64,000 nt of DNA from Octopus bimaculoides (lineage: Eukaryota), in assembly GCF_001194135.2 (NCBI RefSeq), contig NC_068990.1, forward strand, positions 94,160,913 through 94,224,912. The letters are read 5' to 3'. The position numbers were made by a program, and so were the translations under genes. Under the pieces are notes generated by a model. It did no database searches, was not told where the DNA came from, and worked only from the letters and a program-made list of their open reading frames with translations. How positions within the stretch are numbered: the stretch's first letter is position 1; every line of letters starts with the position of its first letter. Below, in pieces: positions 476 through 54,393 of this stretch.

Positions 476-623
476 AGTGGTTTTAGGAAGAGCATCCAGC
501 TGTAGAAACTCTGCCAGATCAGATTGGAGCCTGGTGCAGCCTTCTGGTTTCACCAGTCCTCAGTCAAATCGTCCAACCCATGCTAGCATGGAAAGAAGAC
601 GTTAAACGATGATGATGATGATG

Positions 624-625
<2 letters not shown>
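476..625 (+). mobile_element. RTE LINE 3' end fragment with (GAT)n tail
   Basis: Motif gcatccagctgtagaaactctgcc...ccatgctagcatggaaa..gacgttaaac(gat)n is shared with the 33325-33782 copy, which is joined to an RTE RT C-terminus. Confidence 0.85.
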
Positions 626-662
<37 letters not shown>

Positions 663-724
663 TGCACACACATATATATATACACACACATACATATATA
701 TGTATATATACACATACACATACA

Positions 725-1106: not shown

Positions 1107-1146
<40 letters not shown>

Positions 1147-1149
1147 GTC

Positions 1150-1590
1150 AGGTGCTCTTATTTTTTCATACAAATACCACAATTGTGTGGCCTTCTATGA
1201 TATATTCACATAAAGTAAGAAACTCAAAATGCTATTTTGAAATCATACCGCTTCCGTCACTAATAATGAATTTTTACTTCTGCCTGCCAGCTATTTGCTA
1301 ATCACTATTTTTTCTATGTCAGGTGAGGCTAAATTCGTCTAAGCATGTGGTTGCTGGCAGATGCTTGCTACTGATGATATGCAAATATGCAGAAATCTGG
1401 ATTTAACACTACTGCCAGACAATTTTGGTTGGCTACAAATATTCTTCTGTGCTTTTGAGCATAATCTGTTCATCTTTCTCAAGGCAAATACCATAGTCGT
1501 GTGGATTCTTAGATTATATCTGCATTAAATAGGATATATAGAAGGCTGTTTTGAAATAATGCTGCATCCATTACTAATAATGAATATATA
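1150..1590 (+). mobile_element. Retrozyme-like or Penelope-derived non-autonomous element: direct repeat, hammerhead, direct repeat (314-nt period)
   Basis: 1171-1271 and 1485-1585 align ungapped at offset 314 (72/101 identical by hand count). A hammerhead motif lies between them, and microsatellite flanks both sides. Confidence 0.65.
1350..1423 (+). ncRNA. Type I hammerhead ribozyme motif (degenerate)
   Basis: CTGATGA 1371-77; stem II tatg/CAAATA/tgca; GAAA 1392-95; stem III atc-tg-gat; NUH triplet ATT 1401-03. Stem I: tgcta/taaca (4 of 5 pairs), internal loop, ctggcag/ctgccag (7 bp), ttg/caa. Confidence 0.65.
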
Positions 1591-1599
1591 AGTGTGTGC

Positions 1600-1801
1600 A
1601 TGTGTATGTGTGTGTGTGTGTGTGCGTGTCTTCATAACTGGTATTGGTTTGTTCATGTCCCTGTAACTCAGTGGTTCAGCAAAAGGCACCAATAGAATAA
1701 GTATCAGATTTTAAAGTGCCAGGAGTGACCAGTTCAACTTTCAAGGTGGTCTCCAGCAATGTCATGGTTAAATGACCGAAATGAATAAAAGATAAAAGAT
1801 A
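1600..1801 (+). mobile_element. 3' half of composite SINE (microsatellite + ...aatagaataagta...ctccagca... tail)
   Basis: Similar to the tails at 4140-4247 and 30162-30245. Confidence 0.6.
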
Positions 1802-1967: not shown

Positions 1968-2406
1968 GAAAAGGACAATCGATTATATGAAGAGGACAGT
2001 TGACTATCTAAAGAGGACAGTTGACTATATAAAGAGGACAGTCGATAATCAAGAGAGGACAGTCAATTATCTAAAGAGGACAATGGATTATATAAAGAGG
2101 ACAGTTGACTATCTAAAGAGGATAGTTGACTATATAAAGAGGACAGTCGATTATCTTAAGAGAACAGTTGATCATTTAAGACAATAGTTTCATTATTCAA
2201 AGTGTACACTTGATCATCTAAGACGATAGTTGATTATCCCAAAAGGACAGTCGATTATCTAAAGGGGACATTTGATCATCTAAAACGATAGTTGATTATC
2301 TAAAGAGAAAAATCAATTATGTAAAAAGGACAGTTGATTATTCAAAAAGAACAGTTAATCATCAAAGACGATAGTTGATTATCCAAAGGAGACAGTTGAT
2401 TATCTC
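1968..2406 (+). repeat. 21-bp minisatellite, ~21 units, consensus aagaggacagttgactatcta
   Basis: Tandem units are directly visible. The first 10 are in frame and read (KRTVDYL/I)n; later units degrade, some to 20 nt. Confidence 0.95.
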
Positions 2407-2890
2407 CATATTGTGCTGAGAGATTAATCATTTACTGAATATAGTTTTGTTATTCTATTTATAATCAATGTGCTATTTTCGTGCTTTCATAAATTTGTCA
2501 TGGCTTTCCTTTTGAAAGCTTCATGTGTTTCAGATGGATTAATTTCTAATATTTTCACATTTTTCAATAACCGCCTCAGATTCCCAGGGTGCTTTTCTCT
2601 TGATTTTCTATTTGAATCAACTCCAGCTTACAGCTGCATCATAATGTAACATGACAAAATTTTCGTATAAGCACATTGGTTCTATTTAATTCAATGAAGC
2701 ATATTTAATAATGTTGAAGTTTGATTTTTATTTTATTTTTCTCTATGGTGGGAAAATGTAAGAATAACTTGCTTCAAGCATAACTAATCTTTACAAATTG
2801 CAAATATAGTCAAATAGTAACTATAAAAGGGAGCAGTATAAATATGTATGCCTGCAGGAGGATTTTGTTCATGTAGATTGTGTGTCAAAT

Positions 2891-3165
2891 TCATCATCAT
2901 CATCGTTCAACATCCGTTTTCCATGCTGGCATGGGTTGGACGGTTCGACTGGGGTTTGGGAAGCCAGGAGGCTGCACCAGGCCCCAATCTGATCTGGCAG
3001 TGTTTCTACAGCTGGATGCCCTTCTTAACGCCAACCACTCCATGAGTGTAGTGGGTGCTTTCTACATGCCACCGGTACAGGGGCCAGAGGAACTGGCATC
3101 GGACATGAGTGGATGGTGCTTTTTACGTGCTACCAGCACGGGGTTTCACAACTACAATTTCCATT
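2891..3165 (-). mobile_element. RTE LINE 3' end fragment, older subfamily
   Basis: (cat)n cgttcaacatccgttttccatgctggcatgggttgg...tttctacagctggatgccc, the reverse complement of the 476-625 motif. Confidence 0.85.
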
Positions 3166-20288: not shown

Positions 20289-20459
20289 CAATGGTGATAC
20301 TAAATTCAGATGACAATTTCTGCTTGTAAATGAATCTTCAGAAGCCAGGTAGATTTCACAGCAAGCTTATAATCCGTTTGGTCAATCGAAAGATTTAGTT
20401 TGCAGCTCTTAAGACCGGAAACAGTCATACTGCAAAATAAATAAAGTGATATTATTTCT

Positions 20460-20895
20460 CATTTTGGCAAAAGGCGAGTAATTTTTAGAGGGAGTTTATT
20501 AGTTGCTTATGTTGACCCCAGTGTTTAACTGGCCCTTATTCTATTGACCCTGTAAGGACAAAAGCTAAAATCAACCTCAGCCGAATTTGAACTCATAATG
20601 TAAAGAGCTGATCCCCTTTCCATCCTACTCAGCAAAGTAAACTGTGAGTTTGCATCAAATAATAATTATAAGAATAATAGTTTCAAATGTTGGCACAAGG
20701 CCAGCAATTTTCGGAGTGGCGGTGTGGGGTAGTCAATTTCATCAACCCCAGTATTTGACTGGTACTTTATTTTATTGACTCTGAAAGGATGAAAGGCAAA
20801 GTTGACCTTGGCAGAATTTGAACTCAGAACATAAAGAGAAGTGAAATGCTGTTAAGCATTTTGCCCAACATGCTAATGACTCTGCCAGCGCACCA
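20460..20895 (-). mobile_element. Two tandem tRNA-derived SINE copies
   Basis: ggtactt..ttattgactctgaaaggatgaaaggcaaagttgaccttggcagaatttgaactcagaac (B-box gagttcaaat on the minus strand) occurs twice. Confidence 0.8.
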
Positions 20896-37295: not shown

Positions 37296-37964
37296 ACTTT
37301 GCTTCTATGTAATCCAAATTGTGAGTCATGTTTCATTCCAGATGGGTTGATAAATAACTAGTTGCTACACTAATGACTGAAATAAAATAGAACTTATACT
37401 TTGAATAGTGCAGCTATAAATTTCTTATCAGCAATCATAGATGTCTTCTTGTATTTTCAGATAACATAGGTACCAAGCAAACAACTGACGACTGCATGAA
37501 GATAACCTTTAGGACAGGATGTTGTACACCTGTTGATGCCCCAGGCCAAACATTTTCTTTATTCTAGCCATATGGCTGGCTCTTTTTTTTTTTAACCTCA
37601 AGAAATTGCATTGTGTAAGTGCCTACACACAAAACTGTTAAATTCATTTAAAATATATTTTATGAGGTGTCAAAATGTTTTGTTGCACAACTGCAACTTG
37701 GTCACTGATTGACTTTTTGCAAAACTCCTTCTCCTGATTAACCTTTAAAAGAAAAACTCATTCACAGCTTTCTCAGTCAACTGGTTAATCATCTTAGTTG
37801 TTTGAGTGAGTAATTGGAGAGGAGACCAGAAGTTTTCATTCCAAGCCTTTTCCTCAATCTAATTTTTACACTATGAATTATTTTGTATTTGTAAATGCTT
37901 TAGTTCTTCTTCTGCAGCAGATATGGCTTCAGTGTTGCAATTTGAACACATGTAGGTTGTCAAC

Positions 37965-40796: not shown

Positions 40797-40975
40797 TCAT
40801 CATCATCGTTTGACGTCTGCTTTCCATGCTGGCATGGGTTGGACGATTTGACTGAGAGCTGGCAAGCCAGAAGGCTGCACCAGGCCCCAATCTGATCTGG
40901 CAAAGTTTCTACAGCTGGATGCCCTTCCTAAAGCCAACCACTTTACAGATTAGATTGGGTGCTTTTCATGTGGCA
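40797..40975 (-). mobile_element. RTE 3' end fragment (further short ones at 29700-29750, 35357-35400 and 50943-51100)
   Basis: catcatcgtttgacgtctgctttccatgctggcatgggttggacgatttgactgag...tttctacagctggatgcccttcct. Confidence 0.85.
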
Positions 40976-40998: not shown

Positions 40999-41430
40999 TA
41001 AGGCGGTGATCTGGCAGGATCGTTAGCACACTGGTATTTTGCCCATCACTATGTTCTGAGTTCAAATTCTGCCGAGGTCGACTTTGCCTTTCATCCTTTC
41101 AGGGTCAATACATTAAGTACCAGTGAAACACTAGGGTCAATCTAATCAACCAGTCCCCTCCCTGAAAATTTCAGACCTTGTGTCTATAGGAGAAAGAGTT
41201 ATTGAAACTAAGGCAAGATGGCAGAATCCTTTGCACAGTAGACAAAATGCTACTGTGTTTGTCTCTGTGTTCTCATTTTAAATGCTGCCAGGGTTAACTT
41301 TGCCTTTCATCTTTCCAGGGTCAATAAAATAAGTACCAGTTATGCACTGGGGTTAACAAAATTGATTATCGCTCTCCCACAAATTTTCAAGCCTTGTGAC
41401 TACAATAGAAAGAATTATTGTTATTATTAT
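40999..41430 (+). mobile_element. Two tandem tRNA-derived SINEs; the first is flanked by a 17-bp target-site duplication
   Basis: ttattgaaactaaggca at 40982-98 and 41199-215; B-box gagttcaaattc; shared core actttgcctttcatc.tt.cagggtcaata.a.taagtaccagt. Confidence 0.85.
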
Positions 41431-42559: not shown

Positions 42560-43690
42560 TTGACCTTGGACTCTGCTGTGCATGCGCACTAAGTTTTAAC
42601 GTTCTAGCTCACTTCCGCTGTCTACAGCAGTACTTGAAAGGAAGGTGTGTAGCATGTGATCCTCACATTGACCATGACAGAGAAAGTTGAGCAGAGAATC
42701 TGCATCAAATTTTGCCAAAAGCTTAGTAATTGTTGCTCAGAGGCCTGTGCAAAGTTGCAGAAAGTGTATTGGGAAGAGTGTATGAGCTGCATACAAGTGT
42801 ACAAGTGGTTCAGACGTTTCCAAGATGGCCGAAAAAATGTCAATAGTGACAAACGTTCTGGAAGAGCCACAACTAGAAGAACTGAGAAAAACATCGTAGA
42901 TGTGTGTGCAGCTGTGAGGAGAAATTGTTGAATCACCATCTGTGAATTATCAGGAGATATGCAAATTAATTACAGTTCAGTTCAGTCCATTATCAATGAA
43001 GATTTGTGTATGAGACATGTATCTATCAAGTTTGAGCCAAAACTGCTTTCAGCTGACCAAAAATCACTCAGGTTTCAGTTGCACAAGATCTCCTTGATTG
43101 TGTTGAGAATGATGAAAACTTTTTGAAAACGGTCATAATGTGTGATGAATCGTGGGTCTATGGCTATGACCCAGAAACAAGGGCTCAGTCTTCACAGTGG
43201 ACAGCCCCAACTTCTCCATGACTGAAGAAAGCACAAATGAGTCAAAGCAATGTGTAGACACTGTTGACCGTTTTCTTTGACTACAAGGGGATTATTCATC
43301 ATGGGTGTGCTCCAGCTGGTCAGACAGGAAACAAGGAGTACTACCATGACATTTGGCGGCATTTGCAGGATGCTATTCATTGGAAAAGGCCACAATTGTA
43401 TGCATCCACTGAGTGGCAATTGCACCATGACAACACACCTGCCCATTCAGTGCAGCAGTTTTTGGCTAGGCACAGCATCCCCCAACTCCAACAGCTTCCA
43501 TATTACCAAGATCTCACCCCTTGTGACTTTTTCCTCTTTCCAAAAATCAAATCCTACTTGAAAGAAAGAAGATATCAGGACGTTGAGGGAATCAAAGTAT
43601 TTGCGACAAAGCAGCTGCTGATAATCCCAGAAAATGAGTTCCAGGAATGCTTCCTTCAATGGAAACCGCTGGATTAAGTGTGTGGCTTTG
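42560..43690 (+). pseudogene. Near-full-length mariner transposase pseudogene (ATG at 42674)
   Basis: MTEKVEQRICIKFC...VYKWFRRFQDGR..DKRSGR (HTH), CDESWVYGYDPET, TVFFDYKG, LHHDNTPAH, PYYQDLTPCDFFLFPKIK; several stops and frameshifts. Confidence 0.95.
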
Positions 43691-48865: not shown

Positions 48866-49230
48866 TTTTTTTATGTTTGTTTATATTTTTTGATGAAAAT
48901 TTGACTTGGATCAGCGTGGTCACCATATGTTGTTAATAATCACAACTGACATATATCACTGTGCACTCATATATAAATACACACACATACATATAATATT
49001 TGCTTCTTGATTCATTTACTGAAGATAATACAGATAATGACTGCTTTCATCATTATACTTGAAATGTGTATAGTGTGCCAGGCAGCCAAGAACAAGACAA
49101 AATACAAGGAAAAACAAAGACATCAACACAAAAAAACAATGTATTCTCAAGTAAATGGTACACATATCCAAAGAGATACTTCAAAGAAACAGCATTCAAC
49201 AAAATTGCCTTCAGGTTCTAATGATGACTC

Positions 49231-49526
49231 CACTGCCAGGATCAGTTGACTCTTCTACCCACTGCCAGGATCAGTTGACTCTTCTACCCACTGCCAGGAT
49301 CAGTTGACTCTTCTACCCACTGCCAGGATCAGTTGACTCTTCTACCCACTGCCAGGATCAGTTGACTCTTCTACCCACTGCCAGGATCAGTTGACTCTTT
49401 TACCCACTGCCAGGATCAGTTGACTCTTCTACCCACTGCCAGGATCAGTTGACTCTTCTACCCATTGCCAGGATCAGTTGACTCTTCTACCCATTGCCAG
49501 GATCAGTTGACTCTTCTATCCACTGC
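49231..49526. repeat. 29-bp minisatellite, 10.2 copies, cactgccaggatcagttgactcttctacc
   Basis: Directly visible; only 4 variant positions across the array; no spacers. Confidence 0.98.
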
Positions 49527-54299: not shown

Positions 54300-54393
54300 A
54301 ATTTATGATTGAAGATATAATTTATGATTGAAGATATAATTTATGATTGAAGATATAATTTATGATTGAAGATATAATTTATGATTGAAGATA
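54300..54393. repeat. 19-bp minisatellite, 5 perfect copies, aatttatgattgaagatat
   Basis: Directly visible. Confidence 0.97.

What the first reader, a model, noticed from the sequence alone, without database searches (positions are those of the whole stretch)
1350..1423. Decayed type I hammerhead ribozyme with Schistosoma-like geometry
Seen: CUGAUGA, 4 nt, loop CAAAUA, 4 nt, GAAA, exactly 6 nt, then UH, plus a stem I of 5 bp (one mismatch), an internal loop and 7+3 bp. Established: the Schistosoma Sm-alpha hammerhead has the same spacing (CUGAUGA GUCC CAAAUA GGAC GAAA CGCGCG UC), the same CAAAUA loop II, a bulged stem I and a short palindromic stem III that favours dimer folding. Inference: stem III atctggat is one CpG transition from the palindrome atccggat, and stem II tatg/tgca is a few transitions from tgcg/cgca. 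This looks like a methylation-eroded real ribozyme, probably inactive in this copy.
Basis: partly seen in the sequence, partly recalled or inferred. Interest (0 to 1): 0.85.

Follow-up and report, generated by a model that had tools for sequence, protein, structure and literature searches.

The report
Probable decayed hammerhead ribozyme relic
A 75-base stretch has every invariant base and the exact spacing of an animal-type (type I) hammerhead self-cleaving RNA, but one of its three helices is broken, so it is most likely a dead relic of a known ribozyme-carrying repeat, with a chance look-alike as the main alternative.

Summary
CTGATGA (1371-1377), N4, CAAATA, N4, GAAA, N6, TT are all present, with helix I plus a 12-bp distal helix (1349-1424). 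Standard Rfam scans report nothing. An 84-nt scan gives a full-length Hammerhead_HH9 match of 22.1 bits, against a gathering score of 52. A model I built from the two Rfam consensus sequences ranks the site first in the whole window on both strands (19.8 bits; next best 12.3). Chance expectation is about 1e-4 to 2e-3 per 64-kb window, which means tens of such sites per Gb-sized genome.

Support: the motif lies in a 1.4-copy, 314-bp, 34% GC tandem duplication, the usual setting of animal type I hammerheads (non-LTR retrozymes). CpG is strongly depleted in the window.

Against: helix II has 1 Watson-Crick pair of 4, the conserved G10.1-C11.1 pair is U-A, the hammerhead fold is about 20 kcal/mol above the MFE, and no second copy was found.

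No genome of the source organism could be searched, so copy-family and covariation tests remain open. My verdict is a probable inactive relic (about 0.62) versus a chance motif (about 0.33). Known kind, modest interest.

The parts
1349..1360 (+). Distal helix I, 5' strand (GGUUGCUGGCAG)
   Evidence: Pairs with 1412-1424 (7 WC bp, bulged A1419, 3 WC + 2 G.U). It is present in the MFE fold.
1361..1364 (+). Helix I internal loop, 5' side (AUGC). HH9 has UUAC here.
   Evidence: cmscan and cmsearch alignments. Only 2 of 4 bases match the consensus loop.
1365..1370 (+). Proximal helix I, 5' strand (UUGCUA)
   Evidence: 4 of 6 pairs with 1404-1409. The mismatches are U1365.C1409 and C1368.A1406.
1371..1377 (+). 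Catalytic core C3-A9 (CUGAUGA)
   Evidence: Exact match to the consensus.
1378..1391 (+). Helix II (UAUG / UGCA) and loop II (CAAAUA, 1382-1387)
   Evidence: In register the pairs are U-A, A.C, U.G and G.U. The alternative is UGCA(1380-83)/UGCA(1388-91), 4 WC bp with a 2-nt UA bulge. The loop equals the Hammerhead_1 consensus loop.
1392..1394 (+). Core G12-A13-A14
   Evidence: Exact match.
1395..1402 (+). Helix III: A15.1...U16.1 enclosing UCUGGA. The 8-mer AUCUGGAU is self-complementary as RNA with two G.U pairs.
   Evidence: The 2-nt loop rules out a monomer hairpin. The self-duplex of GAAAUCUGGAUUU is -10.2 kcal/mol, against -14.7 for the Schistosoma-like sequence.
1403..1403 (+). H17 = U. 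The predicted cleavage site is 3' of this base.
   Evidence: Position in the cmscan alignment. U is an allowed H.
1404..1424 (+). Helix I 3' strand (UAACAC), internal loop (UA), distal 3' strand (CUGCCAG-A-CAAUU)
   Evidence: 'UAC' aligns with the UAC of the HH9 consensus, and CUAC also occurs at this position in L012 and L019.
1147..1280 (+). Left copy of a direct repeat (start of a 314-bp unit, 1147-1460)
   Evidence: BLAST 73.5% over 102 bp, E=8.7e-8. nhmmer E=2.1e-9. Ungapped identity 66% over 134 bp.
1461..1594 (+). Right copy of the direct repeat. This is a second, truncated unit that ends before a second hammerhead would occur.
1107..1146 (.). (CA)n microsatellite at the left edge. It is the tail of the upstream SINE-like copy at 953-1105.
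1590..1629 (.). (TG)n microsatellite at the right edge, in inverted orientation to the left one

Best explanation
This is an inactive relic of a canonical metazoan type I hammerhead ribozyme. It was probably carried by a short, AT-rich tandem-repeat retroelement (a non-LTR retrozyme or Penelope-related repeat) with a monomer of about 314 bp. In a live element, multimeric transcripts would fold two neighbouring hammerheads into a dimer through the palindromic helix III. Each would cut 3' of H17 (here U1403), releasing monomers that a tRNA ligase circularises and a retrotransposon reverse transcriptase copies back into DNA. This mechanism is taken from PMC7229834 and PMC4209133 and is not shown here. 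In this copy only 1.4 units remain, there is no partner hammerhead, and helix II and part of helix I have been lost, partly through CpG-to-TpG decay, so self-cleavage is not expected. Shown: the sequence anatomy, the model scores and the tandem duplication. Inferred: descent from an active element, and the retrozyme identity of the unit.
For: (1) All invariant positions (C3-A9, G12-A14, A15.1-U16.1, H17) are present with the exact Hammerhead_1 spacing and the consensus loop II CAAAUA. (2) There is a full-length (model positions 1-77) Hammerhead_HH9 match of 22.1 bits, E=8e-4 in the 84-nt scan. (3) Model R1, built only from the two Rfam consensus strings, was run without filters on all 128 kb. 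The site is the top hit at 19.8 bits (E=0.0024) and the runner-up scores 12.3 bits. (4) Two bacterial coding sequences carrying the identical 25-nt pattern were scanned in the same 84-nt layout. Neither gives a hammerhead hit at E<=10. A repeated coral hammerhead-core family gives only 11.3 bits. (5) Simulation gives 3e-4 per window for helices plus a distal helix this good. (6) Context: a 314-bp-period partial tandem duplication, 34% GC, bounded by microsatellites. Canonical animal type I hammerheads occur in tandem repeats of about 150-450 bp with GC below 45-50% (PMC7229834). Penelope-like elements favour microsatellite targets (PMC8557442). Comparable local duplications cover only about 2% of the window. 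(7) A cephalopod genome is reported to hold 235 Rfam Hammerhead_1 hits as well as Penelope elements (PMC6962438). (8) CpG o/e is 0.26, and three pairing defects are TpG sites.
Against: Helix II is essentially unpaired in register. The G10.1-C11.1 pair, the most conserved pair after A15.1-U16.1 (PMC3088659; PMC4209133), is U-A, which needs two transversions or an unusual ancestor. The score is far below Rfam gathering (22.1 vs 52). The whole-window and 271-nt Rfam scans report nothing. With R1, core-matched chance sequences reach 17.9 bits (L015, a bacterial gene), and unclassified ones reach 18.5-20.6, so the helices add only about the top 2-5% of what chance gives once the core is present. 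The hammerhead fold is about 20 kcal/mol above the MFE. The 84-nt fold z-score is -1.5 and the 314-nt unit z-score is +0.6, so there is no compact retrozyme-like structure. No other copy of the unit or motif exists in the window, and six-frame translations found nothing among 5.8 billion proteins. The two repeat copies differ by about 30%. At that age an untouched 19-nt core plus loop is expected only about 2-5% of the time without ascertainment. TGATGATA also resembles the local (GAT)n SINE tail, and CTGATGA is about 1.5-fold over-represented.
Confidence: 0.62

Rival explanations
1. Chance look-alike. An AT-rich, (GAT)n- and TG/CA-rich repeat landscape happened to produce CTGATGA...GAAA inside a 12-bp inverted repeat. 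There is no descent from any ribozyme and no function.
For: Core-only sites are expected 1.8 times per window, and 3 are present. The pattern of a perfect core with poor helices is what core-first ascertainment selects. Helix II and G10.1-C11.1 fail. The score is sub-threshold. Per-window expectations of 1e-4 to 2e-3 imply about 6-100 such sites per 2.7-Gb genome, and the number of windows screened upstream is unknown. Core-matched chance sequences reach 18-20 bits with R1. Perreault et al. warn that consensus-conforming hammerheads arise by chance in large databases. There is no second copy anywhere I could search.
Against: The site is the top hit in the window by 7.5 bits. It combines the exact consensus loop II, the exact spacing, a quasi-palindromic helix III and a distal helix in the right place (3e-4 per window). 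Independently, it lies in a retrozyme-like 314-bp low-GC tandem duplication, a setting that covers about 2% of the window.
Confidence: 0.33
2. A still-active variant hammerhead that uses the shifted helix II (2-nt UA bulge after A9, UGCA/UGCA, AAUA tetraloop) and a G.U-containing dimeric helix III. It would cleave only when paired in trans or with another copy.
For: The shifted helix II is 4 perfect WC pairs and appears in the MFE fold. One unpaired base between A9 and 10.1 is normal in Penelope-type hammerheads and in the coral family CTGATGA-T-GATC-AAATA-GATC-GAAA. The helix III self-duplex is -10.2 kcal/mol. Natural hammerheads with helix II of 1-2 bp exist.
Against: I found no precedent for a two-base bulge. 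The closing pair would still be U-A rather than G-C. Helix I has two mismatches. No partner hammerhead lies within the 64 kb. Even the shifted fold is 6-10 kcal/mol above the MFE.
Confidence: 0.04

Closest known systems
Rfam Hammerhead_1 (RF00163), type I, Schistosoma Sm-alpha / amphibian satellite type
   Same: Identical core, identical spacing (4-bp helix II, 6-nt loop, GAA + 8 nt + H17), identical loop II CAAAUA, 6-position helix I, and a short helix III that cannot close as a monomer hairpin.
   Different: Helix II is UAUG/UGCA instead of GUCC/GGAC. U10.1-A11.1 replaces G-C. H17 is U rather than C. Helix I has two mismatches. It does not reach the gathering score.
Rfam Hammerhead_HH9 (RF02275), intronic amniote hammerhead
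   Same: It is the best-scoring Rfam family, with a full-length alignment. It shares the helix I architecture (6 bp, internal loop, distal helix), UAC on the 3' side of the loop, and a CAAA-A loop II.
   Different: 22.1 bits against a gathering score of 52. The 5' loop is AUGC rather than UUAC. Helix III is shorter by 3 nt. There is no evidence of conservation or an intronic setting.
Metazoan non-LTR retrozymes (PMC7229834), including the Mytilus 350-390-bp and axolotl 330/350-bp repeats
   Same: A hammerhead-like motif sits inside a tandemly duplicated unit of about 314 bp with 34% GC. The weak, palindromic helix III implies dimer-dependent cleavage.
   Different: Only 1.4 units and one motif are present. 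No multi-copy family has been demonstrated. The monomer RNA is not unusually structured (z=+0.6). No expression data are available.
Penelope-like-element min-hammerheads (PMC4209133) and the coral metagenome family found here (L027, L029, L011 and others)
   Same: An unpaired base or bases between A9 and helix II if the shifted register is used. A palindromic helix III. Microsatellite-flanked insertion.
   Different: Those have one bulged base, a G10.1-C11.1 pair, helix II of 6-8 bp, helix I of 4-5 bp and an adjacent RT/GIY-YIG ORF. None of these is seen here.

Membership tests
Hammerhead ribozyme, canonical metazoan type I (Rfam clan CL00010) | Invariant core C3 U4 G5 A6 N7 G8 A9 ... G12 A13 A14 | tested here: met
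   CTGATGA 1371-1377 and GAA 1392-1394.
Hammerhead ribozyme, canonical metazoan type I (Rfam clan CL00010) | A15.1-U16.1 pair followed by H17 (not G) | tested here: met
   A1395-U1402, then U1403.
Hammerhead ribozyme, canonical metazoan type I (Rfam clan CL00010) | G10.1-C11.1 pair closing helix II | tested here: not met
   The pair is U1378-A1391. It is also U-A in the shifted register. Its conservation is stated in PMC4209133 and PMC3088659.
Hammerhead ribozyme, canonical metazoan type I (Rfam clan CL00010) | Helix II of about 4 base pairs | tested here: inconclusive
   In register there are 1 WC pair, 2 G.U pairs and 1 A.C mismatch, and the fold scores +1.9 kcal/mol. The shifted register gives 4 WC bp but needs a 2-nt bulge.
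Hammerhead ribozyme, canonical metazoan type I (Rfam clan CL00010) | Helix I of about 6 bp, open-ended, continued past an internal loop | tested here: inconclusive
   4 of 6 proximal pairs, and a strong 12-bp distal helix.
Hammerhead ribozyme, canonical metazoan type I (Rfam clan CL00010) | Short helix III (1-2 bp) with a small palindromic loop, allowing a dimer | tested here: met
   AUCUGGAU is self-complementary with two G.U pairs. The self-duplex is -10.2 kcal/mol.
Hammerhead ribozyme, canonical metazoan type I (Rfam clan CL00010) | Loop I / loop II tertiary-contact nucleotides | tested here: inconclusive
   Loop II CAAAUA equals the consensus. The 3' UAC is present. The 5' loop is AUGC where HH9 has UUAC.
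Hammerhead ribozyme, canonical metazoan type I (Rfam clan CL00010) | Rfam gathering score | tested here: not met
   No hit at gathering. HH9 scores 22.1 against 52. Caveat: apparently good hammerheads in L019, L030 and L035 also fail gathering.
Hammerhead ribozyme, canonical metazoan type I (Rfam clan CL00010) | Covarying helices among homologous copies | not testable with these tools
   No eukaryotic genome collection is available. No copy was found in the window or through translated search.
Hammerhead ribozyme, canonical metazoan type I (Rfam clan CL00010) | Self-cleavage at H17 | not testable with these tools
   This needs an in vitro transcription assay.
Metazoan non-LTR retrozyme | Tandem repeats of 150-450 bp, dimers or longer, each unit with a hammerhead | tested here: inconclusive
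   1.43 units of 314 bp. The second unit stops before the hammerhead position.
Metazoan non-LTR retrozyme | Low GC (<45-50%) | tested here: met
   34.4% GC over 1147-1594.
Metazoan non-LTR retrozyme | Multi-copy dispersed family | not testable with these tools
Metazoan non-LTR retrozyme | Monomer RNA with a compact, highly paired fold | tested here: not met
   The 314-nt unit has MFE -61.1 kcal/mol, z=+0.60.
Penelope-like element pLTR min-hammerhead | One bulged base after A9, helix II of 6-8 bp, G10.1-C11.1, adjacent RT/GIY-YIG ORF | tested here: not met
   Helix II is 4 bp at most, the closing pair is U-A, and I saw no Penelope-type ORF nearby. The only RT-like fragment lies about 31 kb away and has no Pfam hit.

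The most novel reading that the evidence does not exclude
The locus is a member of an undescribed molluscan (possibly cephalopod) retrozyme family with a monomer of about 314 nt. Its hammerhead would natively use a U10.1-A11.1 closing pair, or a 2-nt bulge after A9, and a G.U-containing dimeric helix III, and it would still cleave as a dimer.
Probability: 0.05. Interest if true: 0.5.

Novelty: new member of a known kind. Interest (0 to 1): 0.3.

Why it matters
If it is real, it adds one dead copy to the already large catalogue of animal type I hammerheads and retrozymes. It would also hint that this genome, probably a mollusc or cephalopod, carries or once carried a retrozyme family of about 314 bp. 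That is useful for repeat annotation and for circRNA surveys, but it does not change what is known about the ribozyme. There is also a practical point. Standard Rfam scans with default filters miss this site entirely, and it appears only in a scan of about 84 nt. Decayed ribozyme relics are therefore systematically invisible to routine annotation.

Tried and rejected
1. Rfam at gathering on the whole window, and at E<=10 on 271 nt, gave no hammerhead. The only weak hits were R2_retro_el (18.3 bits) and Chlorobi-RRM, both dismissed as chance.

2. Other copies were sought by self-BLAST (word size 7), nhmmer --max, and a structure-first scan allowing one core mismatch. None were found.

3. Copies elsewhere were sought by exact look-up of local ORFs and by a concatenated six-frame query against 5.8 billion proteins. 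Nothing was found.

4. I planned to sample the source genome through transposase homologues. I dropped this because the best hits are only 64% identical, and the one Octopus bimaculoides protein (55%) has no contig on record.

5. The metagenome scan for CTGATGA-N4-CAAATA-N4-GAAA returned no relative of this locus. I used those loci as positive and negative controls instead.

6. I tried to build a model from the metagenome hammerheads. Their helices I and III could not be aligned with confidence, so I used the two Rfam consensus strings instead. The helix III positions hidden in the Hammerhead_1 printout were filled from memory as CGCG..CG and N.

7. The retrozyme-style compact fold of the 314-nt unit is not supported.

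8. Reverting the putative CpG decay improves the hammerhead fold from +0.6 to -17.2 kcal/mol, but it never becomes the MFE. This is uninformative, because the HH9 consensus also folds 5.5 kcal/mol above its MFE.

9. tRNA-derived SINE head near the locus: ARAGORN finds none.

Full report
**What is there.** The window is a eukaryotic draft assembly. It has 2,604 N, about 33% GC, many microsatellites, SINE-like repeats and mariner remnants.
- CUGAUGA is at 1371-1377.
- UAUG / CAAAUA / UGCA is at 1378-1391.
- GAAA is at 1392-1395.
- UCUGGA is at 1396-1401, U16.1 at 1402 and U17 at 1403.
- Helix I is UUGCUA (1365-1370) against UAACAC (1404-1409), with 4 of 6 pairs.
- The internal loop is AUGC / UA.
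- The distal helix is 12 bp (GGUUGCUGGCAG / CUGCCAG-a-CAAUU).

The spacing is exactly that of the Rfam Hammerhead_1 consensus, aUccag CUGAcGA GUCC CAAAUA GGAC GAA [8] C cuggAu, and loop II is identical to it.

**Is it more than chance?**
- Rfam at gathering thresholds finds nothing in the window. An E<=10 scan of 271 nt shows no hammerhead either.
- When only 84 nt are scanned, which loosens the filters, Hammerhead_HH9 matches over its full length (model positions 1-77, window 1352-1426). The score is 22.1 bits, the gathering score is 52, and E=8e-4 for that search. This rescales to about 1.4e-4 per 64-kb window for that model.
- I built an independent covariance model (R1) from the HH9 and Hammerhead_1 consensus strings alone. 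Run with filters off over the whole window on both strands, it puts this site first at 19.8 bits (E=0.0024). The next best hits score 12.3 bits or less and are plain hairpins that delete the core.
- A 200-Mb first-order Markov simulation gives 1.78 core-only sites per window (3 observed). It gives 0.034 with helices as good as here, and 3e-4 when a distal helix of 7 bp or more is also required.

The site is therefore a clear outlier within this window. The same numbers predict roughly 6-100 such sites by chance in a genome of about 2.7 Gb, and I do not know how many windows were screened upstream.

**Controls with the same core.** A metagenome scan for the exact 25-nt pattern returned 120 loci. 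They are a mix of hammerheads with a perfect helix II, a repeated coral-associated family, and bacterial coding sequences that match by chance.
- In the same 84-nt Rfam layout, two bacterial chance matches give no hammerhead hit at all. The coral family gives only 11.3 bits, locally.
- With R1, loci with a perfect helix II score 21.5-36.1 bits. The best clearly bacterial coding match (L015) scores 17.9. Three loci I could not classify score 18.5-20.6.
- At 19.8 bits the candidate lies below all likely-real examples and at the top edge of the chance distribution. Once the core is given, its helices are in about the best 2-5% of chance.

**Can it work?** Probably not.
- In the canonical register, helix II is U-A, A.C, U.G, G.U. 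The hammerhead secondary structure scores +1.9 kcal/mol against an MFE of -18.3.
- The MFE uses the distal helix and a UGCA-AAUA-UGCA hairpin.
- The 10.1-11.1 pair is described as the most conserved pair after A15.1-U16.1 and as 'highly conserved G10.1-C11.1'. Here it is U-A.
- A shifted helix II (UGCA/UGCA) gives four Watson-Crick pairs but needs a two-base bulge after A9. One bulged base is common in Penelope-type hammerheads and in the coral family found here. I found no precedent for two.
- Helix III cannot close as a monomer because its loop is 2 nt. AUCUGGAU is self-complementary as RNA through two G.U pairs (-10.2 kcal/mol), so the dimer mode typical of animal type I hammerheads would be available. 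No second hammerhead-like motif exists in the 64 kb.

**Context.** The motif lies inside a partial tandem duplication. Positions 1147-1280 and 1461-1594 are ungapped direct repeats (BLAST 73.5% over 102 bp, E=8.7e-8; nhmmer E=2.1e-9). This gives 1.43 units of 314 bp at 34% GC.
- The duplication is bounded by (CA)n on the left, which is the tail of a SINE-like copy, and by (TG)n on the right.
- The literature describes canonical metazoan type I hammerheads as residing in tandem repeats of 150-450 bp (about 300 bp) with GC below 45-50%. These are the non-LTR retrozymes, and they often need dimeric hammerheads (PMC7229834; PMC4209133).
- Penelope-like elements favour microsatellite targets (PMC8557442).
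- Comparable local duplications cover only about 2% of the window, so this is independent, moderate support.
- Against it, the 314-nt unit has no unusual folding stability (z=+0.60). The second unit stops before a second hammerhead. The roughly 30% divergence between the repeats implies an age at which an untouched 19-nt core plus loop would be expected only a few percent of the time.

**CpG erosion.** The window has CpG o/e of 0.26 and TG/CA o/e of about 1.3, so the idea is reasonable.
- T1380, T1388 and T1398 are TpG sites. Reverting them to CpG turns two G.U pairs into G-C and makes helix III the perfect palindrome AUCCGGAU.
- A fourth change, at A1379, is not CpG-type, and U10.1-A11.1 remains.
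- The reversions lower the hammerhead fold energy from +0.6 to -17.2 kcal/mol but never make it the MFE.

**Prior.**
- The giant squid genome paper reports 235 Rfam Hammerhead_1 hits and Penelope elements (PMC6962438).
- My only evidence on the source organism is a 55%-identical Octopus bimaculoides mariner protein.
- No eukaryotic genome collection was available. Translated and exact-ORF look-ups found nothing. The decisive test, homologous copies with intact and covarying helices, could not be run.

**Verdict.**
- The most likely explanation (about 0.62) is an inactive relic of a canonical type I hammerhead, probably from a retrozyme-type repeat of about 314 bp.
- A chance look-alike remains a serious rival (about 0.33).
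- An active variant is unlikely (about 0.04).

Either way the kind is well known, so interest is modest.

Noticed in passing
window 476-679, 953-1146, 28183-28287, 2879-2992(-), 40797-40895(-): A SINE-like repeat family (81-92% identical copies) ending in (GAT)n(CA)n tails. One copy abuts the hammerhead-like locus. Its tail TGATGATACACATATA is 81% identical to TGATGATATGCAAATA in the hammerhead core.
   Followed up: partly
window 1972-2405: A 21-bp minisatellite with 20.8 copies, showing a 62-bp higher-order period, 350 bp downstream of the locus.
   Followed up: no
window 49230-49526 and 54300-54393: Very regular minisatellites: 29 bp x 10.2 (98% matches) and 19 bp x 4.9 (100%).
   Followed up: no
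window 36933-37358, 42653-42928, 43258-43674: Mariner/Mos1-type transposase remnants: Pfam Transposase_1 at 75 and 24 bits, HTH_48 at 28 bits. The closest database proteins are only 64% identical or less, including one Octopus bimaculoides protein at 55%.
   Followed up: partly
window 33033-33224 = 33298-33489: A 192-bp duplicate at 100% identity, 265 bp apart, next to an N run. It looks like an assembly or gap-filling artefact.
   Followed up: no
window 20436-20838 and 41046-41420: Two further partial tandem duplications (periods 225 and 216 bp, 70-75% identity). They are unrelated in sequence to the 314-bp unit and have no hammerhead-like core.
   Followed up: partly
window 1379-1386: ATGCAAAT, an exact POU/Oct octamer motif, spans helix II and loop II of the candidate. 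It is probably coincidental.
   Followed up: no
L027 (2814+, 2400-), L029 (1621+, 1208-), L011 (8759+, 8725-), L066 (2323+, 2286-) and about 20 more loci: A repeated family in coral-associated and marine metagenome contigs, actCTGATGA-T-GATC-AAATA-GATC-GAAA-ACGT-TA. It has a hammerhead core with one bulged U after A9, a G10.1-C11.1 pair and a palindromic ACGU helix III, and it often occurs as head-to-head inverted pairs. This resembles Penelope-type min-hammerheads. Rfam HH9 gives only 11.3 bits.
   Followed up: partly
window 1332-1420: A weak R2_retro_el (RF00524) match of 18.3 bits, against a gathering score of 38, that deletes 125 of 212 model positions. I judged it to be chance.
   Followed up: no
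window 1144-1154 and 1315-1325: An exact 11-mer, TATGTCAGGTG, occurs twice, 171 bp apart, inside the 314-bp unit. The second copy reads CAG|GTGAGG, which resembles a 5' splice site.
   Followed up: no
whole window: Method note. The 22-bit HH9 match is removed by Infernal's filters in the 271-nt and 64-kb scans and appears only in an 84-nt scan. Several apparently good hammerheads in metagenome loci (L019, L030, L035) also fail Rfam gathering.
   Followed up: yes
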